A stretch of DNA of 63,272 nucleotides, the filler included, from Intoshia linei (lineage: Eukaryota; Animalia; Orthonectida), in the NCBI GenBank assembly GCA_001642005.1. It is 7 parts of 7 records of this genome, joined end to end, with 100 filler letters (N's around TTAATTAATTAA, not from the genome) between each part and the next. Parts side by side here need not be neighbours in the genome. Positions count along the whole stretch, not along the records: positions 1 to 13,222 come from LWCA01001029.1; 6 more parts are not named here. One strand, written 5' to 3'. Below, piece after piece: positions 1-13,222 of the stretch. The translations under genes were made by a program, and so were the position numbers. The notes under the pieces were generated by a model that searched no databases, was not told the origin of the DNA, and saw only the letters and a list, made by a program, of their open reading frames with translations. How positions within the stretch are numbered: position 1 is the first letter of the stretch; every line of letters begins with the position of its first letter.

Positions 1-276
1 AATCTGATTTAAACTTTTCAATTTGAAGTAAAATGATATATTGCATTATGATCAGATGGATTGTCCACGGCCGCATATAAACGCTCTCATGGCCACATGC
101 GTTGTGCACCCCTGACCTAGGTTACACATTTTATTATCTGAAATGTGCATCTTCACAGTAAAAACTACAAATTACTTTAAAATAATAGACCTAGAATTTA
201 AAAAAAAAAATCACTAAATTATTATAGATCATACAACTTTTTAAACAATGATACAATATTTTACCTTGATGGTTAC

Positions 277-453
277 ATTTTTTAAATGGGGTGCAACTTG
301 AACAACTTTGTAAAATGTTTTTTGTTTGTGTTTGTTTACTTCAATAGATCGATAAACTAATCGACCAAGTCCAAAATTTTTTAGATTTGACAATATGTAA
401 AATAACTGCTTTCCACGTAATGTTGTTTCACGCCCAACAAAAACCTGTTTCAT
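277..453 (-). CDS. MRPS34: Mitochondrial ribosomal protein S34, first exon (rest of gene lies left of the window)
   Basis: MKQVFVGRETTLRGKQLFYILSNLKNFGLGRLVYRS matches the invertebrate mS34 N-terminal pattern (GR.T...GK.L..I..NLKNFG.GR.V.R). A GT donor follows at 276, with an alternative at 264. Confidence 0.8.
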
Positions 454-1116
454 TTTAAAAAAAGTTTAGTTTATATTAATTTACAAGGTTTCCAGTTGTT
501 GTAGTAAAAGTTATTTTGCATTTTTCATTTTTTGTTAAAATTTAACTGTCGACTCGTAATCGTCTGTAGGGATAGAAAAAATATGCTATTAACACATATT
601 TAACAATATTTAACCCATCAATTGATGAAGACGCATACATGCGTTTGGTAAAATCAAAACGATACAGATTTAAAACATTACAACCTGCTTGAAATTGTAA
701 TTTTAAATATATAAGAATGTGATAACATTTTTCAAATCTTGTCGGTTCTAAATTTCTCTGAAGTGTTAATCAATTAGGCTGAAAAATACAAACAATCACA
801 ATGAAATTCGTTACATAAAAATACAATTTTTAGATATGTATTCTTGTCAATATGATTATATTTTTTTGTCTGAAATTCATTAAAAATTACAGTATTTTTC
901 CAAAAAATAAAAAATAAAAGAAATTGTACACCAATAACGCAAACAAAATATTGGCTTTTATATTTTTGCAAGTCTTTTACAATTAAAATTTGAACTATTA
1001 ATTCCCAGAATTTAACATTCAATTTATATTTTTACTTTAAAATATTAAAATGTTTTTCAAATTAAACAACAAAGTTGATTTAAAATTGACATTTTATCGT
1101 TAGATAAACAGGAGAA

Positions 1117-4100
1117 ATGACATTGGATATAGATTTATTTAGAAAGGTAATTTGCATAATATTTTGACCTTTCAATAAACGGTTTAAATAGGATAAGGAT
1201 TTTGACACAATAATACAGAGTGAAAAAAAAAGATTCCACAAATTAGAATCGATTAAAAATTTGGATCGAAATGAACTAATTTCTAAACACGAAAAATTAA
1301 CGAAATGTCATTTTTTTGATTTTTTTAAAATAAAAATAATTTAGTAAAAGAATGTTATGTTAGTGAATGTGAATGTAAGGTAGAAATGACATATTTTCAG
1401 TACATTAATTAAATTTGATAGGAGACCTTGAGTGAACTTGAAAATGAAATTCATTCGGAAATAAAACAACTTGAATCTGAAATTAGGAATACATTGATTG
1501 GTTTTGGAAATATTTTGAATTCTAACGTTGTAATCAGTCAGGATGAGGTAAACGTTTAATTAAACATTAATTTAAAATGTGTACACAACAATTATATGAT
1601 TGGTTTACTAAATTTCGTATTTGACATTTTATGTTGATTCGTTAATTTTGCTTGAATTTAAGGAAATTTATTTTTATAGTTTTATATTTAATATATAGAG
1701 TGAAAATCAATTGATTAAAATTTGGAGTCCAGACGGTAAAAATGTAGAAGATAAAAATCCGAAATATGATTGCAGCCACGTGGACTTGTTGAAAAAAATT
1801 GGTGGAGTTGATTATCAAGCGGGAGTTGATGTAGCTGGAAGTCGTGGATATTATTTAAAGGTTTGTTTAATATATTATATATTCAACCTTCTCTAGGGTC
1901 CAGCTGTTTTTTTGGAGGATGCAATAATCAATTTATGTTTTGAAATATTGATGAAAAAGGGGTACACACCAGTTAGTCCACCTTGTTTTATGAAAAAAGA
2001 TGTTATGGTCGAAGTGGCTCAACTTTCTCAATTCGATGATGAACTTTATAAGGTATAAATTTCGTATCAATACCACCTAAGGTAGTTTTCCCGGTGTTAC
2101 GTATTTATATCTGGAAATTGGAATCTATTCTAATCATAATATTACTCATGGTTATTAATAATATCATATGATACTTTTTAGGTTTTTAATCAAGATAAAG
2201 AGGACATGTATCTAATTGCAACCTCAGAACAACCTCTCGTTGCTCTACACCGTGACGAATGCATTAAAGAGTCGGAACTTCCAATAAAATACATGGGCAC
2301 ATCTTTGTGTTTTAGGCAAGAAGTCGGCTCACATGGTAGAGACACAACGGGCATTTTCAGAGTCCATCAATTTTCAAAAGTGAAATGTGTTATAATTAAT
2401 TAGAATATGTTTAGATTGAACAATTTTGTTTAACGTCATCGGATAAAGGAGAATCGGACAAAATGTTTGCTGAACTGATGGAAAATTCTGAAATTTTGTA
2501 CCAAAAACTAAACATTCCTTACAAAATAGTTTCAATTGTTTCTGGTGAGTTAAATCTAGCAGCATCCATCAAATACGATTTGGAGGGATACTTTCCATCT
2601 TCTCGGAATTATAGAGAATTGGTTTCTTGTTCGAATTGTACAGATTACCAATCTCGATCTGTACGTACCTGTTTCCAAAAAAATGAAGCTTGTGAATTTG
2701 TCCATATGTTGAATTCCACAATGTCTGCGACAACCCGAACAATTTGCGCATTGTTAGAAAATAACCAAACTGAAAATGGTATCAATATTCCTAAAGCTTT
2801 ATCCAAATTCATGCCAGATGATTACAAAACGTTTATACCATTTGTAAATAATGTATGTAAACCAGTGGCTTTTAAATTTACAAAGTCGAAACGTATGTCT
2901 TTAGGTATTGAAGTCTTTCGAAATGAAGAAATGTTGAGGGTAATAAAAGACAGTGAAGTTAAAAGATGTCACTCAGTCGGCCTTGTTGATGAAATTTTGG
3001 AGATTGATGAAAAATGGAGATGCCTCAGGTTTGATATTGATAGATTCAATCGTTTGAAAAATTCGACAAGTAAAATTGTAGGAGAAAAACTGAAAAAGAA
3101 GGACATGTCTGGTGAAAATACTAAATTATTATGCTGTGAGCAATACACAAAAGAGGATTTGGGAAAATATAACGTGGACTGTTTAAAAGATTTAATTAAG
3201 GACATTGCTCAAAATTCTAAGAACTCTAAATCTTTGTTGGAAGAAATGGAGAACCGTCAAGAAATTTTGCTAAGTAAAGTTGGAAATATCGTGAGTCCAG
3301 TTTTACCAAAAGATGGGGTAACCGAATGGATTTCGTCGCGTCCAATAAATGTTGAGTACAAGGAATGTCACGAATTGTTTAATATACTGAACGGGATAAA
3401 TGTATTATCTGGTCAAGTAGTCGTCGGAAATGGTGGCTATTATTTGACTGGCAATATGCTGGTTTTAGAAAGAGCTATAATAAAAATGTGTTTGGCATTT
3501 ATGAAAAAAAAGGAACATGTACCAATTGTACCACCTTGTTTTATCCGTGAAGAAATAATTTCAGAATTACGCAGTGACGATGATACTTTATTCAAAATTT
3601 ATGGTAAAAAAACTGAAAATCCTAACGACCCGGAATGTGACATTAAATACTTGAATGCAAGTTTAGAACAAAGCACTATATCTCTTCATAGAGACGAATG
3701 GATTACTACTAACCAATTCCCTATAAAATACACTCCTGTTTCAGTTTGCTTTAACTATTGCAAAGAAAACAACAGAAAAAATCAATATACTCAAATTGAA
3801 CAACTTACCATGACCTCACCTTTTGACGATGAATCCAATATTACATTTAAAGAAATGCTTTCTAATCTTATCGAGTTTTATAAATCACTCGGCATACCTC
3901 ATCGGATTGTTACTCCACCTCCCAGTAATAATTTTGTTTTTTATATAAGTATATTTTTAGCCAACTTACCCATTGAAGCTTCTGAATATATAATTCTTGA
4001 AGCGTATTATCGGTCCACTAAGGGTTATAAGGAGATTGCATATTTATTAAATACTACTGATTATATGTCGCGTTCCGCGAGAATTCGATATGGTGTCACA

Positions 4101-4359
4101 AAAGGAATGGATAAAGCTGTTTATATAGATAATTATTTTGCTTATTTTTTCATCTAGACTTCATATGTTCACATAGTTTATGGTAAAATATTTGATTCGA
4201 TGAATATGTTGTGCGCATTTCTGGAAAACAACCAAACTGCAGAAGGCATTCAAATACCTGAAGCACTTAAACCGTTTATGCCGGAAAGTAATTCCATGTA
4301 TTTTAAACTTGGTATAAATTTATGATTTAGGATTCAAAACTATTCCATTTATAAATTGA
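1117..4359 (+). CDS. SARS1: Cytosolic seryl-tRNA synthetase, tandem double-copy (catalytic copy 1 in frame with degenerate copy 2), ~880 aa
   Basis: Exons 1117-1146, 1192-1306, 1345-1379, 1422-1547, 1699-1860, 1897-2052, 2182-2379, 2415-3924, 3961-4118, 4158-4287, 4331-4359; all are GT-AG and frame-consistent. Copy 1 has [41 protein letters not shown], motif 2 [36 protein letters not shown] and motif 3 [20 protein letters not shown]. Copy 2 starts at ATG 2895 (MSLGIEVFR) and ends [32 protein letters not shown]. Confidence 0.92.
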
Positions 4360-4821
4360 TTATTTTCTGTTTTCCGTTTATTTATTTTTTAAATAAATTT
4401 AATATACTCTTTATTAATTACATCTGTGGTTCCCAAACTTTTTACCAACATTAAGTTATGCTCAACCTGAATTTTTGAGCGAAACTCAAAATTTGGCTGA
4501 AGCGCAGCGAAGCGTGTTATTTTTTTTTGTTATTTAAAAAAATTTTTGGTGCCCTCTTTACTTTGGGGTCTCTTTTTCAAAAATTAATAACAGTTTACAC
4601 ACAATTTTTATTGCAAATTTCAAAATGAATTCTTTAAGTTTTTATTATAAGTTTGATCTGATGATTTTGATTAAAATAATTAAATTACCCTGATAAATGT
4701 CACTTAACTCTGAGCTCTGAGTTTAATTTGAAAACCCGAAGTCTCAGGAGGAAAATAACGCAATTGGCAACCTTAAAAATATGGTTTCAGCCAACATCAT
4801 TGTCGGAAATTATATCATTAA

Positions 4822-5042
4822 CCCTTTCACTGTCTGTATTCTATATTATACACAGCAATTTCACTTCACACGTCTGTGTATTCTATAATATATACAGTAT
4901 AATTTTGAAAAACTTTATTTTATTTTCATACATAAATCACATATTTTCACAGGTAATTTAAAAATAATACAAGTTTAAATTAAAACATAAATTCCAGACG
5001 TGTGTGTGATAGTACATAAAATTGCATCAGACAGTAAAAGGG
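4822..5042. mobile_element. piggyBac-type MITE
   Basis: TTAA on both sides; TIRs CCCTTTCACTGTCTG ... CAGACAGTAAAAGGG. A related copy is at 40060-40201. Confidence 0.8.
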
Positions 5043-5909
5043 TTAAAATATAACGTTAAAAGTCGCTATTGGACAAAAATGACCCATATTAAACTATTTT
5101 TTTCGATGAATTATAACGAAATTTTTTTTTGTTGATACATATTGTCTCAAACCCTCATAGAATCTCTTACTCACTGAAATAGTCGTAATCCGATTCTTTT
5201 TCACTGTTTGAATCAAATATATCTTATTCTTTATTATAAAAAATATCATTTTTAGAATTCTAGTAGAATTTAAAAATTCCAAGCTAATAGATTTATTTAC
5301 ATTATTTATGAAAATACAGAAATTATAATTTTTTTGATAGTATTAGTTTTTTAATTTTACATATTTATCATCGATGTTGTACAACATAAGCCTTATTTAT
5401 TTTTATATAGCTTTCTAGTATAATTTTTGATAATGTTAAAGAAAAATATAGCCGCGTTAACACTTTAATAATTTTTTTTATAACTACTCCTTTTTACTAA
5501 ATATAAATTCAAATAATTAATTGAGTAAAACACGATTTATAATGGTAACCCCTTAACAATTTCAATTAAAAGACTATAGAGATATTATTTTGGTTCTAAA
5601 GAGTTTGGGTGAAACCGTTTGATTATAAGTATGATGATATAATTATATCTATGAAAAATGCCATAAAATGTTAATTAATTCCATAATTAATCATTAAAAT
5701 CAAATTTTTCCTTGAATCCGGTTGAGACAGACCATTTATACTGCAAACTGTAACATTTCAATCTTTGACATGTTCAAATACAGTGGTGACTCATTTTAAT
5801 GTGATGATATCAATAACATGCATATAGTTGTGATTTCTATTTAAGTAACAAATTTTATATAACAATAAATTGTAATCATTTTTTCAACAAAATAGGTGAG
5901 TTATGTAGG

Positions 5910-8900
5910 TTATTCACACGCCAATTTTCCATCAAAACTACTTAAAGCTATTCCAAAGGCTTGCAATGCGCATAAAGGGTAATTATAATCAAGTGTGAAC
6001 ACATCATCCGCAACTCGACCAAATTGCATAACAATATATTCGACTAAAATGAAATGAATTTTTTTAATTATTAATTAAAAATGTATATATATTTTTACCA
6101 TCATTATCGTGTACAATTTGAAAATTTTTAACTGACGCTTGCGTGACACGGCCAAAAAAGTTGAGTACATATGATTGTGTTTCTAAATTATTTTTATTGT
6201 AATTTATAAAATTTTAATTTACCTTCATTCCAAATGGGTTTTTTGTTGTGTAATTCAAGTATATTGTCCATTTTATTTCCCTTCCATCGACTAATTAAAC
6301 AATCTTTATCCTAAGATATTATATATTAGGTAATTCACAAAGTTATGTCGTTTTTATTGATACAATTGATTAGAAACTCTATATAACCGATAAGATTTCA
6401 CGTATTTCCAAATATAAAATATTTTTTAACAATCACGTGTATGACCACATCAGATAAGAACGTAATTTATTTAAATTTACATTTATTCAATGGCCATTTA
6501 GACGAAATATTTTAATGATTTTGAGGGACATTTACGTCATATTTTACTGTATGAGTACTTTAAGGATCTTAGTGCAGTGGTAGCTACCAAAAATATATGT
6601 GCTGTGTATGGTAAGGATGTTTTAAATGACAGAAAATGTCAAAGATGGTTTAAAAGATTTCAAGATGAAAACTACACCCTAATGGATTTCCAACGTTCCG
6701 ATAGACCTTCAACTGTTGACATTAATCAAATAAAAAGTGAATTAAAAAAATCTCCAATTCAAACATGTCAATCGCTTTCCATTGTTACCAGCTGTTCAAA
6801 AACCAGTGCCTATAATTGTTTGAAACGTTTACAAAAAGTGAATAAGTCTGGAATATGGGTACCCCACTTATTAACGATTCAACATAAACTAAATAGAAAA
6901 AACGTATGCCAATTATTACTAGCCAGACTAAAAAATGAATTGTTTTTAGAAAATATTGTGACTGGTGATGAAAAATGGATACATTGTGATAATACTAAAT
7001 TGAAAAAACAATTGACAAATAAAAGCCAGTTTTTTTCAAAATGGAATTAAGAAGTTACCGGAACGTTGGAGAAGAATTGTTGAATGCAATGGAGAATATT
7101 TTGTAGAATAAAGGTTAATCAAAATTTTTATTATAGAAGTTTTAATTATAGTTATAAAAATGACATTACTTTGTGAATGACCTAATACTAGTAGATCAAT
7201 ATAAATAGGAATGTATTTGAATTTTAAGCAAATCTTACTCTTTTTGGGCATAGATCAACTCTATTAGAATCGTGATCCATTCCAGGAATAATTATACTCA
7301 TTTTGCGTGGACCTCTAAACCCTAATACGTTAGTTTCCTAAAAATGTATTATAAATTATTTCAAACAAAAATGTAATTTTACATAAACTATTGCAGCCAA
7401 TTCTTTGCGTAATATTGCATCTTTGGTAACTGGTGTTTTTTTTGGGTTTGAACCACTATTGTATATAGTAAATTGTGTTCCAATCATATTTGAACTAAAA
7501 AATTAATTAATTAACTGATGATAAAATTGGTGTCTAACACTCTATGAATTCTAATTTTGAAAATACCGTAATTTTCCAACACACGCACCGCCATTGCGAG
7601 ACAAATCAATTGGGTCGACTGAAATTATGTAGTTTGACGTTTTACTTTTTCTTCTTTTGCGAGCAGCCAATAAAAATACCTATAAATCACAAATTAAAAA
7701 AACAAAATTAGCATAAAAGTTGACTAATCAATTGTAATTATAGAATAAACTGTTGTTAAAAAAATATATAATTATAGCGAAGGAAATTATTCAATATTAC
7801 CTGTTTAAAAGTTATTACAATTGGCGCAATTAACTACAGCAATTTTACTGAATTTTATTTTTTAAACCATAATAAAAATAAAAACATGTAAACTACAAAG
7901 CAAAATATCCATTACATAATTATAATCACAAATACACAAATGAAAATCGATAGGTTGAAAAGAAAAAAATTAATTTTATCAATTTAAAATAAAAAAATAT
8001 TATTAATTTTAAATTATTGTTGGAATTTCAATAAAATTTTGAATAATAAATTTAAAAATGATAATTTTATTGATATCATCACACTGTAACTTGAAAAATT
8101 ATTACTTTTCTATCTTCGCTTCTTTCCATGTGCAAGTAATATGTAGGATAAATACCTCTATCGACTCCTTTTTTATCCCTAGTTATTCTACATTTTATAG
8201 GTACACCTTGTGGAGCAGGTTTCAATACAAACTCATTGATTTTTTCACAGTTTTCAGTGATGAAACCACTCGAACTTCCTGATGATTGATTTTCAATTTT
8301 GAGCTTTTGTTTGACTTGGATGTTGGCTTTCATTATTTTGTCCTACAATATTATATTTTTAATATTATCCAGATATACTTTAATATAAAAATTATCAAAA
8401 TGAGCGGAACCTATAAACTCAAGTTGCTGATAATTTAAAAAAATATAACAAATATAACTGAACCCTGTCTACAGTTTTTGCCACACGAATTTGTCCGTTT
8501 GAGTTTTAATCATTTTGAAGAATTCTTTGTAAAGAAAAATTTCATTTTTTTAATCTGACATGAAATCTATTAACTGAATAGTTCATTTTTACTAATACTA
8601 AAGAAAATATGCAAAAATGGAACTCTAATGATCCATTGTTATCCTCAATTTTACCAAACCGTCAAATAATCATTTTTTTGTTAAAATCGATACGATATTT
8701 ATATTTGTTAAAATTACTGATTTTAAAAATTTTTTTTGCAATTTTTCTTCAGCTTGTGTAACGTTTCTAGTTTTAGTAGGTTTAGATTTTTCTATTTTTG
8801 CAGGTGCTTCAGCAATTTTTTTATTTTTTTTTATTTTTACTGGTTTTTCTACAATTTCTGAAATATTTTCAGATTCTGTTTCTGATTTTGATGACTTTGA

Positions 8901-9643
8901 TGTAGAAACTGGTACATCAGGATGATTTGAGCTTTCAAATGCACTGAGAGCTTTAAATTTTGACGTGCCTTCTTCTATTGTAGGGATTTCTGAATCTTTG
9001 GTATTTGGGTCAATTGTTTCTTCGATTAATTCTATATTATCTGCTTCATCATCTGTATCGTCCGAAAATGCTATCGGGCCATCATATGCTAAAAAATTAT
9101 TATAATTTCACATTGATATTCAATTTTTATAAGTAATATCAGATTTCCAGAGATTTTGTAGTAAAGATTGGATATTAAACATTGCGTTACGACTACCACA
9201 CAAAAAATACAACCGTATGAAATGAAAAAAAATTTTGTATGTAGAAAAATGGTTTTATATTGAACCTCCAATTAAATTAATACGCAAATTACCAAAATGT
9301 GATAAATTGTTTTTATCGGTAATTAATGGGCGTTGATCGTGGTGTTTAGATCTCGGTTTGTTATTAACATTGGCTTGTAACAAAGAAGTGACTTCAGCTC
9401 GTTTCTTTTTTTGCCTTTTTTGCATAAGTTGTTGCTATAAATCAATATAATGAATACGTTAGATTTGAGAATATGAGAATTAATTAAGATTGATGGATTT
9501 TTATAATACCTGTTTTTCCAATTGTTGTTGGCGTAATGACCGCACTTTTGAATTATTCCTATGAATAAATGAAATATAAAGATTCTTTTAAATTACGATT
9601 GTTGGTTGTTATTTGAATCTACTGTCATCCAATTGTTGTCCAT
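5910..9643 (-). CDS. TUB: Tubby family protein (TUB/TULP), multi-exon
   Basis: N-terminal exons read [10 protein letters not shown] / [12 protein letters not shown]...QAN. Tubby domain: [85 protein letters not shown], and C-terminus [26 protein letters not shown]. Start codon is tentative. Confidence 0.92.
6326..7185 (+). mobile_element. Internally deleted mariner transposon within a Tubby intron
   Basis: TA target duplication; TIRs TTAGGTAATTCACAAAGTTATGTCG / TGACATTACTTTGTGAATGACCTAA. The ORF has the HTH (CQRWFKRF), WVPHLL and IVTGDEKW, then jumps to the C-terminal [20 protein letters not shown], so the second and third catalytic Asp regions are missing. Confidence 0.93.
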
Positions 9644-10414
9644 ATTTTTGAATATATCGCTGAAAAATTAAAATTTTATGTTAACAATTTTACAAAATTT
9701 ATTAAATTTGCATTAAATTGGCATTAACGACATTGTCAATTATTCGAATCGTATTTTTGAATTGACTGGCTTTGTTTTCAAGACTCCAATGGTTTCCTGC
9801 GTGAGTATCTGGATACAATATTTATACTTTCAATATTTTGAAATGGTTACATTCCTTTATATATTCAACGAATGTAAAGACAATTAGATTTTGTCTATAT
9901 ATTTTGTAATTACAATAATGGTCACAGTTTTATGTTGAATGTAAAAATCAATTATCAATCTATAATGTGGATTTACTAAACGACTGTATTACACTCTATT
10001 GGATTGTATTCATTACACAATTAAATTATTTGATATACAAGTATAATATATACTGTATATTAAACGATTATATATGTTTATAGATGAGTTGCCTTCTAAT
10101 GTAGGTATATAAAATTTGTTCTATTCAAAGTGAATAGAAATAGTTACACAATTTTTCAGATAATTCAGTCAGTTGACATTAATCTACAATCGTAGTACAA
10201 TGAGGGAGAATATTTAGTGTAAATGTTTTAAACCAGTATATTAGGGTGTCGCATTTCTTTAAAAATTTTAAAATTTTAAGGACGAACGGCACGCATTCTG
10301 TGCATTTAGGGAATATTAATAATAGTTCTCAATAAAAATATTTAATAATAAGTATTGAGTCGGGGTGTAACGATTGGCAGATAAGAACTCGGATAAGTTC
10401 ATCTTAAATAAAAA

Positions 10415-10491
10415 GATGTCCAAATCTCGATTCGAACCTAGCCACGCAGAATACAATTATATGACTATAACCACTCTGCCAGTTAGACATC
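10415..10491 (-). pseudogene. Degenerate tRNA-like sequence (pseudo-tRNA or SINE head)
   Basis: 7-bp acceptor stem GATGTCT/GGACATC, A box TGGCAGAGTGG, B box GGTTCGAATC, followed by a T run. Anticodon and T stems are mismatched. Confidence 0.55.
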
Positions 10492-11263
10492 ACGAGTGAG
10501 TTATCAAAAGTATATATTCGAATCTCGATTAGTATGGTAGCGATATATCACTACACGGGGTTGATCATTTTTAATTACGCATATAAAAATATTATGGAAA
10601 AATTTGAACAGAATTTTATTCCGACCAAAATGATATATACGTGCATATCCATGGATATTACATTACTATGTTGACCTTATATTATATTATATATGACAGT
10701 ATTTTAAATTTAAAATATTAGAATATATAGTATAATAATTTTCTATTAATGAATGAATGTACTAACAATGAACTAATGATGAAGACATTGATAAAATAAT
10801 TTGGCCCTTATCTCTTAAAAAATTAAAAAGATCTGATTGGAAAAAGGAAGACATGAAAAATGAATTTTTTTCAACCACGTCCATGTTAATTGAACAAAAT
10901 ATATTTTCCAAAGGACCTTTTGATATTTTTGCAATTTATTTTACTCCACAATACATGAATACTTTGTCTATGTTCAATATGTATGTTTTAAGTAGTTGCC
11001 AAAAATAGATATTTTTGATGATCTACGTATATTTTAATTTTTATATATTTTTATGTATTTAAATTCATCATAAATATTAATCTATTTGAATTCAGTATTA
11101 GTTAAATTTTTTTAATTCTTAATATACATATATAATATACAATGTATTGTACATGTATCATTTTTTTAATAGATTTATTCAAATTAATTTCTAAATTTCT
11201 AAAACTACTCATGCTGAGCATGAATAGCATAAGTAGGAGAGTCGCCACTGATATTATACATTA

Positions 11264-11846
11264 CAGTCTAAGTCCTATTTAACGGAATTTTTGGAACTCA
11301 AAAATTTAGGAATTCCGCTAAACAGGATGTTTAGCGATGTTTTTCTATAGAAACGTCATATTTAACGGAATTATTTTAAAAATTAAAATTATTAAATATA
11401 GCTATGAAGAGATATATATTTCTTTATTAGAGATTGTGAATACTAAATAAATACATGTGAATGTTTATAATGAATTATAATATTATTCTAATAAGTGGGG
11501 TAGAGAGAAGCTATTTTTAGATTTTTTTAATATCGCTCAATAAAATAAAATTTATAAAATGTTAATTCTAGACTAGAATTTCTAGTTACTGAAATTTAAA
11601 AAATTATTTACATTTAATATTTTTTATTTATAAATTTATCAGATTTTTGAAAATATTGGACTATTTTGGTTTGCTTTTTTTTATTTGAGATAATTATGTA
11701 AATAAATAACAAAACATTTTAAATTAATATTAATTAAATTAAGAGTAAAATTTTAGTTAACGGAATTTTTGGTTTGTCAAAATTTTGAAATTTCGTTAAA
11801 TAGGAATTCCGATAATTATGAATTCGGTCAAATAGGACTTAGACTG
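11264..11846. mobile_element. Tc1/mariner-superfamily MITE nested in a Helitron copy
   Basis: TA duplication; ~26-bp TIRs CAGTCTAAGTCCTATTTAACGGAATT / AATTCGGTCAAATAGGACTTAGACTG; internal subterminal TTAACGGAATT repeats. Confidence 0.85.
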
Positions 11847-11848
11847 TA

Positions 11849-12228
11849 TCACATTGAAAATGACAAAATAGGTTTTTATAATTTTTTTTGAATTTATGCT
11901 ATTTATGACAATTTTTATTATTGGACTGTTTTTACTTTATTTTTAATATTATACACACATTCTGTCTAATACATTAAAAAAATGGAATAACAATTTATTT
12001 TAAAATTTTTTACCCAAATATTTAAACAAAATTAAGATGGAATAATTCACTTTAAAGTAAAAAGTAATGATATGACGGTTTGACCGGGAACAAGTTTGGG
12101 AACCACTCCTTTAAAGGGTTGATAACAATGAATAGTATGATTTTTAAGTTAGTTTTTTTGGTATAATAAAAATGTGCCCTCGGCAGAGCTAGGTGCTGTT
12201 TGTACGTAGTACATAACAGTTAACCTAG
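11849..12228 (+). mobile_element. Non-autonomous Helitron, 3' portion
   Basis: Ends in hairpin GTTTGTACGTAGTACATAAC followed by CTAG|T. The body is repeated at 14200-14606, 21730-22240 and 57385-57820. Confidence 0.8.
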
Positions 12229-13062
12229 TTCAGATAAAAGTAAATAAATTTAAAAATATTGTTGAAATCCACAATGATAAAGAGTATTCATTTTCGACTG
12301 CTCTTATACAACATCGTGGAGTTTGACTTTCTAAAAATAAAACGGTACAGTAATATTTTTTTAAAGAATAGAAATAACGAGTATTAACGTTTATTTAAAA
12401 TATTAACAGTTTAGAATTCAAAAACCACAATTTCTAATAAATTAATGAATAATCAGCCATAGACTTTAAAAAAACATAAATTCTGGGAGGTGCTTTAAAT
12501 TCTTTAATGTTGTTGTAAATCAAAGCATCAGAACCTACATCTTCATGGTCAAAACACAAATGACCTGTTTATGTAAAAATATTAAAGTCCTGGAATTTTA
12601 TACAAAATAAATTCTGGGATATTTTTAAAATCATAAGCATCAGCGTAAATCGCAACTTAAAAAATTAATTGTCACTATCAAAACTACATATTACCCTTTC
12701 TTTATGAAATTAAAAGTCAGAATTTTAGACATAATTACAGCTGATACATTTATATCCAGTTAACACACAGAAAAAATTTTACTCCAACAAAGTGATGCCT
12801 TCACGGTTAAGAAAGCGCTTTTGTATTATTTTCTCCTACTTTCTTGATAACTATTTTATTAAATTTAGGTTAACAAAAAGATGAAAAAAGGATTGCCTCA
12901 CCCTTTAAGCCAGTGATTCTTAACCTTTTCATTGTTTACCTTTCATTAATTATTATGTTAATTTTAATAATAATAATATAATATAATATAATAAATTTTA
13001 AAACATAATTGTATTGCCATTATTAGATAGTTGTTGTAGAACAAGCAGCGTTGTCTTGAAAT

Positions 13063-13222
13063 TTACAGGAAACCTGAGCATAAGTCAAAAGTAGAAAAAT
13101 ATTTATGTCCTTTCAAGCTATCAAAGATATGAGCTGATTTTGGAACAAGATACATGTCTCGTTTAGTAATACCGTTTAATTTACGATAATCAACGCAGAA
13201 TCTATCTGTACCATCTTTCTTT
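13063..13222 (-). mobile_element. Ty3/Gypsy reverse transcriptase fragment
   Basis: Translates as KKDGTDRFCVDYRKLNGITKRDMYLVPKSAHIFDSLKGHKYFSTFDLCSGFL*, matching Gypsy RT motifs KKDG..R.CVDYR.LN and YFS..DL.SG. Truncated by a gap. Confidence 0.88.

What the first reader, a model, noticed from the sequence alone, without database searches (positions are those of the whole stretch)
1117..4359. Tandem double seryl-tRNA synthetase with complementary loss of function: candidate single-chain pseudo-heterodimer
Seen: a complete SerRS runs with no stop through [21 protein letters not shown] into a second full-length SerRS (ATG 2895), giving ~880 aa. Copy 1 has intact catalytic elements (TSE, motif 2 FRQE...FRVHQF, ELVSCSN, motif 3 ATTR). 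Its N-terminal arm is ~40 aa shorter (conserved GN at residue ~89 versus ~130) and lacks the WR..RF..D..N.LKN..SK.IGEK.KKK helix. Copy 2 retains that helix ([33 protein letters not shown]) but has lost catalytic residues: ATSEQ to ASLEQ, CFRQE to CFNYC with a shortened loop, ELVSCSN to EIAYLLN, and motif 3 ATTR to DSMN. Established: SerRS is a class II homodimer that binds tRNA across subunits, with the arm of one protomer holding the variable arm and the active site of the other taking the acceptor end; insect mitochondrial SerRS2-SLIMP is a two-gene heterodimer precedent. Inference: duplication followed by reciprocal degeneration produced a one-active-site enzyme with separate catalytic and tRNA-binding halves. 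I know of no described fused cytosolic example.
Basis: partly seen in the sequence, partly recalled or inferred. Interest (0 to 1): 0.93.

Follow-up and report, generated by a model that had tools for sequence, protein, structure and literature searches.

The report
Fused double seryl-tRNA synthetase, one working site
The only cytosolic-type seryl-tRNA synthetase gene found in the parasite Intoshia linei encodes two enzyme copies in one chain. One copy keeps the active site and the other keeps the tRNA-holding arm, so the pair probably works as a built-in one-sided dimer, though expression and activity are untested.

Summary
Window 1117-4359 (+) of an Intoshia linei (orthonectid) contig holds an 11-exon, 882-codon open frame, already deposited as hypothetical protein A3Q56_06149. 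It contains two complete cytosolic-type SerRS units joined by a 16-residue linker inside a single exon.

- **Unit 1 (aa 1-434):** keeps all 17 catalytic positions checked. It lacks helix 1 of the tRNA-binding arm, including four residues (R44, R47, D51, N54) that contact tRNA in human SerRS.
- **Unit 2 (aa 435-882):** keeps 8 of 9 tRNA-contact residues and 14 of 15 conserved helix-1 columns. It has lost the motif 2 and motif 3 arginines and most other ATP and serine ligands.

Unit 2 is not a decaying pseudogene: neutral simulations to far less than its divergence left no open frame, and its three introns restore frame and length. No other cytosolic-type SerRS was found in the assembly. The nuclear tRNA-Ser genes keep long variable arms. 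Structure predictions place the two units in the canonical SerRS dimer interface.

The best reading is a single-chain asymmetric pseudo-dimer with one tRNA site. It parallels the mitochondrial SLIMP/SerRS2alpha heterodimer and the trypanosomatid double-length TyrRS. Transcript, protein and activity evidence could not be obtained.

The parts
1117..4359 (+). Whole fused SerRS-SerRS gene. Eleven exons: 1117-1146, 1192-1306, 1345-1379, 1422-1547, 1699-1860, 1897-2052, 2182-2379, 2415-3924, 3961-4118, 4158-4287, 4331-4356. Stop TGA at 4357-4359. Product is 882 aa.
   Evidence: Exact spliced mapping of the public protein P0001 onto the window. All 10 introns are 35-151 nt, run GT..TAG, and restore frame and alignment length.
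1117..2846 (+). Unit 1 (aa 1-418), the catalytically intact cytosolic-type SerRS with a shortened arm. It spans eight exons.
   Evidence: About 52% identical to metazoan SerRS and keeps 150 of 201 conserved columns. All 17 catalytic positions checked are kept. AF2 pLDDT is mostly above 90 in the catalytic domain. Best fold match is human SerRS, TM 0.83-0.85.
1192..1547 (+). Unit 1 vestigial tRNA-binding arm (aa 11-102, exons 2-4). It is about 45 residues shorter than the canonical arm, and helix 1 with R44, R47, D51 and N54 (human numbering) is missing.
   Evidence: Alignment keeps 2 of 15 conserved columns with 10 gaps. Residue table. Three-frame translation of 1117-1716 shows no coding room or motif for the missing helix. 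PF02403 is not detected here. AF2 helices 29-53 and 60-85 are about 25 aa each.
2308..2373 (+). Unit 1 motif 2 (aa 251-272), intact, including R253 and E255.
   Evidence: 28 of 28 conserved columns kept; residue table.
2703..2747 (+). Unit 1 motif 3 (aa 371-385), intact, with R382 at 2736-2738.
   Evidence: 18 of 20 conserved columns kept; residue table.
2847..2894 (+). Sixteen-residue linker (aa 419-434, [16 protein letters not shown]) between IPFV of unit 1 and Met435 of unit 2. It has no stop codon and lies inside exon 8.
   Evidence: Direct translation. The KP.. and basic tail resembles the native SerRS C-terminal tail. Predicted disordered, pLDDT below 50 over 421-445.
2895..4359 (+). Unit 2 (aa 435-882), a SerRS-like pseudo-enzyme with a full-length arm. 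It spans the rest of exon 8 plus three exons, with introns at 3925-3960, 4119-4157 and 4288-4330.
   Evidence: About 35% identical to metazoan SerRS and 33.5% to unit 1. PF02403 scores 41.1 bits; PF00587 scores 30.2 bits, just above the cut-off. No closer relative in 1.84 billion representatives. The open frame is not compatible with neutral drift.
2976..3284 (+). Unit 2 coiled-coil tRNA-binding arm (aa 462-564). Helix 1 carries R476, R479, D483, N486, N490 and S493, and helix 2 carries K532.
   Evidence: 14 of 15 conserved helix-1 columns kept. 8 of 9 human tRNA-contact residues kept (contacts from PMC4666401). AF2 helices 462-499 and 528-564 have pLDDT 87-95 when unit 2 has the alignment.
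3747..3803 (+). Unit 2 degenerate motif 2 (aa 719-737). R302N and E304C, the loop shortened by 8 residues, plus V318K and H319N (human numbering).
   Evidence: 9 of 28 conserved columns kept with 7 gaps; residue table.
4170..4217 (+). Unit 2 degenerate motif 3 (aa 835-850). T434M and R435N, with N846 at 4203-4205.
   Evidence: 9 of 20 conserved columns kept; residue table.
2844..2904 (+). Hypothetical alternative 61-nt intron (GTAAAT...TTTAG). If used, it would shift frame and end unit 1 ten codons later, giving a stand-alone unit 1. There is no evidence that it is used.
   Evidence: Read from the sequence. The motif pair is common in AT-rich DNA. It would remove the conserved KP tail.

Best explanation
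The gene encodes one polypeptide of about 100 kDa that folds back on itself as a SerRS pseudo-dimer through the canonical class II (motif 1) interface.

Unit 1, the N-terminal half, supplies the only working active site for serine activation and transfer.

Unit 2, the C-terminal half, is catalytically dead. [quoted passage not shown] This is the cross-subunit mode seen in ordinary SerRS dimers.

The opposite combination (unit 1's stub arm with unit 2's dead pocket) is non-functional, so the enzyme has one tRNA site per chain.

It arose by a tandem duplication in the orthonectid lineage, loss of the stop codon and spacer, and reciprocal degeneration.

What is shown:
- the open frame and the residue pattern;
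- selection on unit 2;
- that this is the only cytosolic-type SerRS locus found.

What is inferred:
- translation as one chain;
- intramolecular pairing;
- that unit 2's arm is required for charging.
For: Continuity of the frame:
- One ORF crosses the junction inside a single exon.

Complementary residues:
- Unit 1 keeps 17 of 17 catalytic positions. Unit 2 loses R302, E304, F316, V318, H319, S394, S396, T434 and R435.
- Unit 2 keeps R9, R44, R47, D51, N54, N58, S61 and K104. These contact tRNA in the human SerRS complex, and D51A or R44A abolish activity or cut it more than 50-fold (PMC4666401).
- Unit 1 lacks R44, R47, D51 and N54.

Selection on unit 2:
- Neutral drift to far less than the observed divergence gave 0 of 2000 stop-free frames.
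- Its introns are length-restoring.

The locus is needed:
- It is the only cytosolic-type SerRS locus and the only PF02403 hit in the 41.6-Mb assembly. The other class II hits are not SerRS; one checked is ThrRS. A mitochondrial-type SerRS lies on another contig.
- Nuclear tRNA-Ser genes are 82-84 nt, meaning they have a long variable arm.

Predicted pairing:
- For unit 1 with unit 2, ipSAE is 0.85 against a best control of 0.01. That mark was reached by 51 of 78 solved complexes and 2 of 108 mismatched pairs.
- The runs agree in at least 86% of contacts, and partner pLDDT is at least 83.
- The interface is symmetric and involves the motif 1 region, for example residue 155 with 646 and 183 with 618.
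- 50 of 53-54 interface columns are the same in both units.
- Full-length AF2 models give pTM 0.64 and 0.75.

Linker geometry:
- In mitochondrial SerRS the C-tail of one subunit and the N-terminal helix of the other lie together at the tRNA T-arm (PMC4013460; PMC10570016). A short link from the C-terminus of unit 1 to the N-terminus of unit 2 is therefore plausible.

Precedents:
- The same logic works experimentally in SLIMP/SerRS2alpha and in double-length TyrRS.
Against:
- No orthologue of unit 2 or of the fusion was found in any database, so conservation of the architecture and dN/dS are untested.
- The complex prediction can pass from memory of solved SerRS homodimers. It also cannot tell intramolecular pairing from pairing between chains.
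- Neither AF2 run had an alignment covering both halves, so part of each model is low-confidence.
- Unit 1 keeps a short helical hairpin plus R9 and K104, so some tRNA binding by unit 1 alone is not excluded.
- Unit 2's interface conservation is only a trend: 17 of 29 against 56 of 141, p = 0.067.
- A 17-codon open AT-rich spacer has a chance probability of about 0.24, so the in-frame junction by itself is not strong evidence of selection for fusion.
Confidence: 0.6

Rival explanations
1. Two polypeptides, SLIMP-style. Alternative splicing (for example the candidate intron 2844-2904) or an internal promoter or initiation site yields separate unit 1 and unit 2 proteins. These form a non-covalent heterodimer with the same division of labour.
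For: A donor/acceptor pair typical of this gene's introns exists at 2844/2904 and would give unit 1 a stop ten codons later. Unit 2 keeps its own Met and native N-terminal motif. The known SerRS precedent, SLIMP/SerRS2alpha, is a two-gene system. The pairing prediction was run on separate chains.
Against: Without that unproven splice, unit 1 has no stop codon before 4357. The read-through frame keeps the KP-plus-basic tail typical of SerRS C-termini. GT...TAG pairs are frequent by chance in this AT-rich DNA. There is no spacer for a separate promoter or 3' end.
Confidence: 0.17
2. The fusion is real, but unit 2 is not needed for charging. Unit 1, alone or paired between chains, recognises tRNA-Ser with its short arm. 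Unit 2 is a pseudo-enzyme appendage kept for another role such as regulation, scaffolding or RNA binding, as with the extra functions of SLIMP.
For: Unit 1 retains a helical hairpin, R9 and K104. Unit 2 is extremely divergent, with a tree branch of 10 against 2.98 for unit 1. aaRS paralogues often gain non-translational roles (PMC9437257).
Against: Within unit 2 the best-kept region is exactly the tRNA-contacting helix: 14 of 15 columns against 81 of 186 elsewhere, p = 1.9e-4. D51 and R44, whose loss abolishes or cuts human SerRS activity more than 50-fold, are absent from unit 1. tRNA-Ser keeps its long variable arm.
Confidence: 0.13
3. Artefact or decay. An assembly or sequencing error hides unit 1's stop codon, or unit 2 is a dying tandem duplicate merged into the gene model. 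The Lactuca sativa double-SerRS model looks like a merger of this kind.
For: Stops lie in both other frames of the linker (TAA at 2845 and 2873), so a single indel error would end unit 1 there. Merged tandem-SerRS models do occur, as in P0016. There is no RNA support.
Against: Unit 2's 448-codon frame, three length-restoring introns and region-specific conservation rule out neutral decay. The junction needs no intron and holds no gap or repeat. The two units share only 33.5% identity, so assembly collapse is not an issue. Two genes with no intergenic space would be odd.
Confidence: 0.05

Closest known systems
SLIMP/SerRS2alpha heterodimeric mitochondrial SerRS of invertebrates (de Potter et al. 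2023, PMC10570016)
   Same: A duplicated SerRS in which one paralogue lost the catalytic pocket but kept the coiled-coil arm, while the other kept catalysis and lost the arm. There is a single tRNA site across the dimer. The dead paralogue evolves faster. The asymmetry extends to the N- and C-terminal ends.
   Different: That system is mitochondrial, arose once at the root of Bilateria, and is encoded by two genes giving two chains. The I. linei pair belongs to the cytosolic clade, looks lineage-specific, sits in one open frame, and unit 1 keeps a vestigial short hairpin rather than losing the arm entirely.
Double-length TyrRS of trypanosomatids (Leishmania major, T. brucei; Larson et al. 2011, cited in PMC8319005 and PMC9437257)
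   Same: Two full synthetase units are fused in one chain and form an intrinsically asymmetric pseudo-dimer. The N-terminal unit keeps the active site. The C-terminal unit has lost catalytic signatures but provides the intact tRNA-recognition element. tRNA binds across the two units.
   Different: TyrRS is class I with a Rossmann fold, and its degraded tRNA element is an anticodon-binding domain with a six-residue deletion. Here the enzyme is class II, the element is the N-terminal coiled coil, and about 45 residues are lost. The TyrRS case is structurally and genetically proven, whereas this one is only predicted.
Canonical homodimeric cytosolic SerRS (human SARS1; PDB 4L87, 4RQE/4RQF)
   Same: Same fold (TM 0.83-0.85), same motifs in unit 1, the same tRNA-contact residues in unit 2, and the same predicted dimer interface.
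   Different: The canonical enzyme is a symmetric homodimer of about 500-aa chains with two arms and two active sites. Here one chain carries two unequal units, one arm and one site.
Lactuca sativa 910-aa double SerRS model (P0016)
   Same: The only other protein among those fetched that has two SerRS units in one model.
   Different: Both units score as near-canonical SerRS (587 and 631 bits). The first carries an intron-like insert and scattered damage rather than a complementary pattern. It is most likely a merged annotation of tandem genes.

Membership tests
Type 1 seryl-tRNA synthetase, eukaryotic cytosolic clade | Class II catalytic core (PF00587) with the SerRS fold | tested here: met
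   Unit 1 exons score 56.8 and 84.5 bits. Unit 2 scores 30.2 bits against a cut-off of 29.3. Best PDB sequence hits are human cytosolic SerRS at 2.9e-92. Fold TM is 0.83-0.85.
Type 1 seryl-tRNA synthetase, eukaryotic cytosolic clade | Full N-terminal coiled-coil tRNA-binding domain (PF02403) in each subunit | tested here: not met
   Met by unit 2 only (41.1 bits), which is the single hit in the whole genome. Unit 1 lacks helix 1: 2 of 15 conserved columns kept with 10 gaps.
Type 1 seryl-tRNA synthetase, eukaryotic cytosolic clade | Motif 2 Arg/Glu, motif 3 Arg, the TxE serine loop and the E..S.SN strand in each subunit | tested here: not met
   Unit 1 keeps 17 of 17. Unit 2 has R302N, E304C, R435N, T434M, S394Y, S396L and a shortened motif 2 loop.
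Type 1 seryl-tRNA synthetase, eukaryotic cytosolic clade | Serylation of tRNA-Ser | not testable with these tools
   Needs an aminoacylation assay.
Single-chain pseudo-dimeric aaRS (double-length TyrRS type) | Two complete synthetase units in one open reading frame | tested here: met
   The ORF crosses the junction within one exon. Two full-length profile matches lie in P0001.
Single-chain pseudo-dimeric aaRS (double-length TyrRS type) | Complementary damage: one unit without catalytic signatures, the other with an impaired tRNA-recognition element | tested here: met
Single-chain pseudo-dimeric aaRS (double-length TyrRS type) | The two units pair intramolecularly like the ancestral homodimer | tested here: inconclusive
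   Predicted pairing gives ipSAE 0.85 against a best control of 0.01. Full-length pTM is 0.64 and 0.75. These are predictions only, may come from memory of solved SerRS dimers, and cannot separate pairing within a chain from pairing between chains.
Single-chain pseudo-dimeric aaRS (double-length TyrRS type) | Expressed as one polypeptide, with both units required for activity | not testable with these tools
No junction-spanning fragment was found in the protein collection.
Single-chain pseudo-dimeric aaRS (double-length TyrRS type) | Homology to TyrRS (class I) | tested here: not met
   Both units are class II SerRS. The resemblance is functional analogy, not family membership.
SLIMP/SerRS2alpha heterodimeric SerRS | Dead paralogue that keeps the coiled coil, paired with a catalytic paralogue that has lost it | tested here: met
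   Unit 1 keeps a vestigial short hairpin, like the sea-urchin SerRS2alpha described in PMC10570016.
SLIMP/SerRS2alpha heterodimeric SerRS | Member of the mitochondrial SerRS clade | tested here: not met
   Both units are closest to cytosolic SerRS, and unit 1 starts at the cytosolic N-terminus without a presequence. A separate mitochondrial-type SerRS gene lies on contig C989.
SLIMP/SerRS2alpha heterodimeric SerRS | Two separate genes and chains | tested here: not met
   There is one continuous frame and no stop between the units.

The most novel reading that the evidence does not exclude
The only cytosolic seryl-tRNA synthetase of an animal is an obligate single-chain, one-site pseudo-dimer. 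This would be the first natural covalently fused pseudo-dimer in a class II synthetase. It would have arisen independently of, but by the same reciprocal arm and active-site loss as, the mitochondrial SLIMP/SerRS2alpha pair. That would show that half-of-the-sites use of SerRS dimers repeatedly drives this outcome.
Probability: 0.55. Interest if true: 0.72.

Novelty: new variant of a known kind. Interest (0 to 1): 0.62.

Why it matters
SerRS is a textbook symmetric homodimer that binds tRNA across its subunits. Two natural systems show that such dimers can split the work between unequal halves: the two-gene mitochondrial SLIMP/SerRS2alpha and the fused class I TyrRS of trypanosomatids.

A fused, reciprocally degenerated cytosolic SerRS in an orthonectid would be a third, independent case. 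It would be the first in a class II enzyme as a single chain, and the first in which an animal's entire cytosolic serine (and possibly selenocysteine) charging depends on it.

It offers a natural experiment on three questions:
- Does one arm plus one site suffice?
- How short a linker can tie a class II dimer together?
- Does extreme genome reduction in parasites favour such fusions?

It also flags that the deposited 'hypothetical protein' annotation hides an unusual enzyme.

Tried and rejected

3. Orthologues for dN/dS or conservation of the fusion:
   - Three word-index searches and one exhaustive HMMER search with unit 2 found nothing closer than 37% identity to unit 2.
   - They found no other complementary double SerRS.
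   - No per-domain dN/dS was possible.

4. Pseudogene reading of unit 2: rejected by neutral simulation and intron behaviour.

5. Missing helix of unit 1 hidden in mis-called introns: rejected, because there is no coding room or motif in any frame of 1117-1716.

6. A second cytosolic SerRS elsewhere in the genome: not found. The other class II hits are not SerRS; the one checked is ThrRS. The weak hits on C989 are a mitochondrial-type SerRS.

7. The free phylogeny did not place unit 2 (branch length 10). Only the constrained test was informative.

8. One AF2 alignment covering both halves could not be built, because MAFFT puts all homologues on one unit:
   - I ran two separate models instead (A1 on unit 1, A2 on unit 2).
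   - Complex prediction ignored the alignments.
   - Model coordinates are not returned, so the linker span could not be measured.

9. P0339, a 198-aa hit carrying both Pfam domains, is a splice-variant-like fragment and not a junction-spanning protein.

Searches used window references exon by exon, or the public protein P0001 by id. Exons were joined only inside local scripts, for mapping and for the neutral simulation.
Full report
**What the window is**

The piece (1-13222) is contig C2391 of a 41.6-Mb, 3520-contig assembly. The top database hit names the organism as Intoshia linei, an orthonectid parasite. The deposited product is 'hypothetical protein A3Q56_06149', 882 aa, which UniRef labels serine--tRNA ligase (P0001).

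The DNA is AT-rich: about 23-27% GC outside genes and 31-34% GC over the gene. Introns are very short.

**Checking the observation**

A mechanical ORF list shows one open frame, 2463-4157. It starts in the C-terminal part of one SerRS and runs straight into a second SerRS.

I mapped P0001 exactly onto the window. This gives 11 exons between 1117 and 4356, with TGA at 4357-4359. The ten introns are 35-151 nt, start with GT and all end in TAG.

The junction lies inside exon 8 (2415-3924). The order is ...IPFV (aa 418), a 16-residue linker (2847-2894), then Met435 at 2895. No intron is needed to skip a stop.

Pfam finds the class II core in both units. It finds the SerRS N-terminal domain only in unit 2. 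The best solved relatives of both units are human cytosolic SerRS, at 2.9e-92.

**The asymmetry, quantified**

I aligned both units with 32 cytosolic SerRS sequences (31 animals and one outgroup) and scored the 201 columns that are at least 90% conserved.

| Region | Unit 1 kept | Unit 2 kept |
|---|---|---|
| All conserved columns | 150/201 | 95/201 |
| Arm helix 1 (human 31-75) | 2/15 (10 gaps) | 14/15 |
| Motif 2 | 28/28 | 9/28 (7 gaps) |
| Motif 3 | 18/20 | 9/20 |

Fisher tests give three results:
- p = 1.9e-4 for unit 2's helix against the rest of unit 2.
- p = 3.5e-7 for the same comparison in unit 1.
- p = 3.3e-8 for motif 2 between the two units.

The human SerRS-tRNA(Sec) structure paper lists the arm residues that touch the variable arm and elbow: R9, R44, R47, D51, N54, N58, S61, K104 and R107. 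D51A is inactive and R44A is down more than 50-fold (PMC4666401).
- Unit 2 keeps eight of these nine. The ninth, R107, is variable among animals.
- Unit 1 has R44, R47, D51 and N54 deleted, and S61 replaced.

For the 17 catalytic positions checked, unit 1 keeps all of them. Unit 2 has these changes:
- R302N, E304C, V318K and H319N, with F316 deleted in a loop 8 residues shorter.
- T271S and S272L.
- S394Y and S396L.
- T434M and R435N.

Three-frame translation of 1117-1716 shows no hidden coding capacity for the missing helix. AF2 models give unit 1 an arm of two helices of about 25 residues each. Unit 2's arm has two helices of about 38 residues each.

**Is unit 2 alive?**

Unit 2 is very divergent. 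It is about 35% identical to other SerRS and 33.5% to unit 1, and its tree branch is 10 against 2.98 for unit 1.

It still has a 448-codon frame in DNA where about 8% of random codons are stops. Its three introns restore both frame and alignment length.

I simulated neutral substitution from a SerRS coding sequence using the local non-coding base composition. Only 1 of 2000 runs stayed stop-free at 0.1 substitutions per site, and 0 of 2000 did at 0.2-0.7, which is the range needed to reach the observed divergence. Together with the region-specific conservation of the tRNA-contact helix, this rules out a decaying pseudogene.

**Origin**

The free tree could not place unit 2. Forcing units 1 and 2 together gives a tree 2.35 log-likelihood units better, which is not rejected (p-AU 0.58). 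Long-branch attraction is a caveat.

The two units share eight derived residues at otherwise conserved columns, for example TPFF to PPCF, W382Y and R405S. Either unit paired with any other taxon shares at most five.

A duplication within the orthonectid lineage is therefore the simplest reading. The intron positions of the two units do not overlap at all, which I cannot explain.

**Is it needed?**

Searches of the whole assembly used the SerRS N-domain profile, C. elegans SerRS and the serS profile. They find cytosolic-type SerRS only at this locus.

The other class II core hits gave no significant SerRS match; the one I checked by Pfam, on C849, is ThrRS. A collinear string of small exons on contig C989 matches mitochondrial SerRS best, at 1.6e-7 against human and bovine SARS2.

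Four nuclear tRNA-Ser genes (GCT, AGA, TGA, CGA) are 82-84 nt long, meaning they keep the long variable arm that the SerRS arm reads.

So the only cytosolic-type catalytic site found (unit 1) and the only cytosolic-type full arm found (unit 2) sit in this one gene.

**Do the halves fit together?**

The pairing test on unit 1 (1-434) with unit 2 (435-882) gave these results:
- Score 0.85 in all three runs, against 0.00-0.01 for three controls.
- That mark was reached by 51 of 78 solved complexes and 2 of 108 mismatched pairs.
- At least 86% of contacts agree between runs, and partner pLDDT is at least 83.

The tool warns that families with solved complexes can pass from memory.

The interface is the symmetric class II one. 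Contacts include residue 155 with 646 and 183 with 618, and 50 of 53-54 interface columns are shared by both units. Unit 2 keeps interface columns somewhat better than the rest of its catalytic domain (17/29 against 56/141, p = 0.067).

Full-length AF2 models, each with an alignment on only one half, gave pTM 0.64 and 0.75, with a disordered linker. The better model matches human SerRS chains at TM 0.83-0.85. Coordinates are not returned, so I could not measure whether 16 residues span the gap.

Published descriptions of mitochondrial SerRS place the C-tail of one subunit next to the N-terminal helix of the other, at the tRNA T-arm (PMC4013460; PMC10570016). These are the same two ends that are joined here, and they are on the functional side (unit 1 site with unit 2 arm). 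That argument is an inference.

**Mechanism proposed**

The gene makes one chain of about 100 kDa that folds as an intramolecular SerRS pseudo-dimer. Unit 2's arm binds the variable arm of tRNA-Ser and delivers the acceptor end to unit 1's active site. The reverse pairing is dead.

Cross-subunit binding is established for bacterial and human SerRS (PMC4666401). From my own memory, engineered E. coli SerRS heterodimers combining an arm-less active subunit with a full-length inactive one remain active (Vincent et al. 1995). I could not verify that paper with the tools, so treat it as a lead only.

**Comparison with what is known**

The reciprocal loss of the arm in one subunit and the active site in the other is published, and biochemically supported, for the mitochondrial SLIMP/SerRS2alpha heterodimer of most invertebrates (PMC10570016). 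That system is mitochondrial, ancient and encoded by two genes.

A covalently fused, intrinsically asymmetric pseudo-dimer is published for the class I TyrRS of trypanosomatids. There the N-terminal unit is active, and the C-terminal unit has lost KMSKS but holds the intact anticodon-binding site (PMC8319005; PMC9437257).

Literature searches found no SerRS pseudo-dimer and no paper linking Intoshia with tRNA synthetases. Among the 458 proteins fetched, the only other double-SerRS model is from Lactuca sativa. It looks like a merged annotation of tandem genes without a complementary pattern.

I therefore file this as a new variant of a known kind: a convergent, cytosolic, single-chain version.

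**What remains open**

- Expression as one polypeptide is untested.
- A typical-looking 61-nt intron (2844-2904) could in principle give unit 1 its own stop. There is no evidence that it is used.
- No orthologue exists in the databases for a conservation or dN/dS test.

**Method note**

Searches used window references exon by exon, or the public protein P0001 by id.

**Verdict**

My confidence in the single-chain, one-site pseudo-dimer reading is about 0.6.

Noticed in passing
G000 contig C989, about 6500-10700 (locus L025:2596-6700, + strand): A second SerRS-like gene split into at least seven small collinear exons with long introns. Its exons match mitochondrial SerRS (human and bovine SARS2) best, at E = 1.6e-7. 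It is probably the mitochondrial enzyme. I did not examine whether it has a coiled-coil arm or a SLIMP partner.
   Followed up: partly
window 1117-4359: The intron positions of the two SerRS units are fully complementary. All seven introns of unit 1 lie in its first 274 codons. All three introns of unit 2 lie in its last 105 codons. None is shared, and all ten acceptors end in TAG. The origin of this pattern is unexplained.
   Followed up: partly
window 6577-7050 (+): A 157-aa ORF carrying the HTH domain of Mos1/mariner transposases (PF17906, 2.8e-11). It is probably a mariner-type transposon remnant downstream of the SerRS gene.
   Followed up: partly
window 8079-8333 (-): An exon-sized ORF matching the start of the Tub (tubby) family domain (PF01167, 1.3e-6). 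It is probably part of a tubby-like gene on the minus strand.
   Followed up: partly
P0016 (Lactuca sativa, 910 aa): A public protein model made of two SerRS units. The first unit has an intron-like insert and a damaged motif 2. It looks like a merged annotation of tandem genes, not a complementary pseudo-dimer.
   Followed up: partly
G000 contigs C2809, C1341, C2142, C2246 (loci L013, L015, L016, L017): Four nuclear tRNA-Ser genes (anticodons GCT, AGA, TGA, CGA) of 82-84 nt, meaning they have the long variable arm. I did not search for tRNA-Sec.
   Followed up: partly
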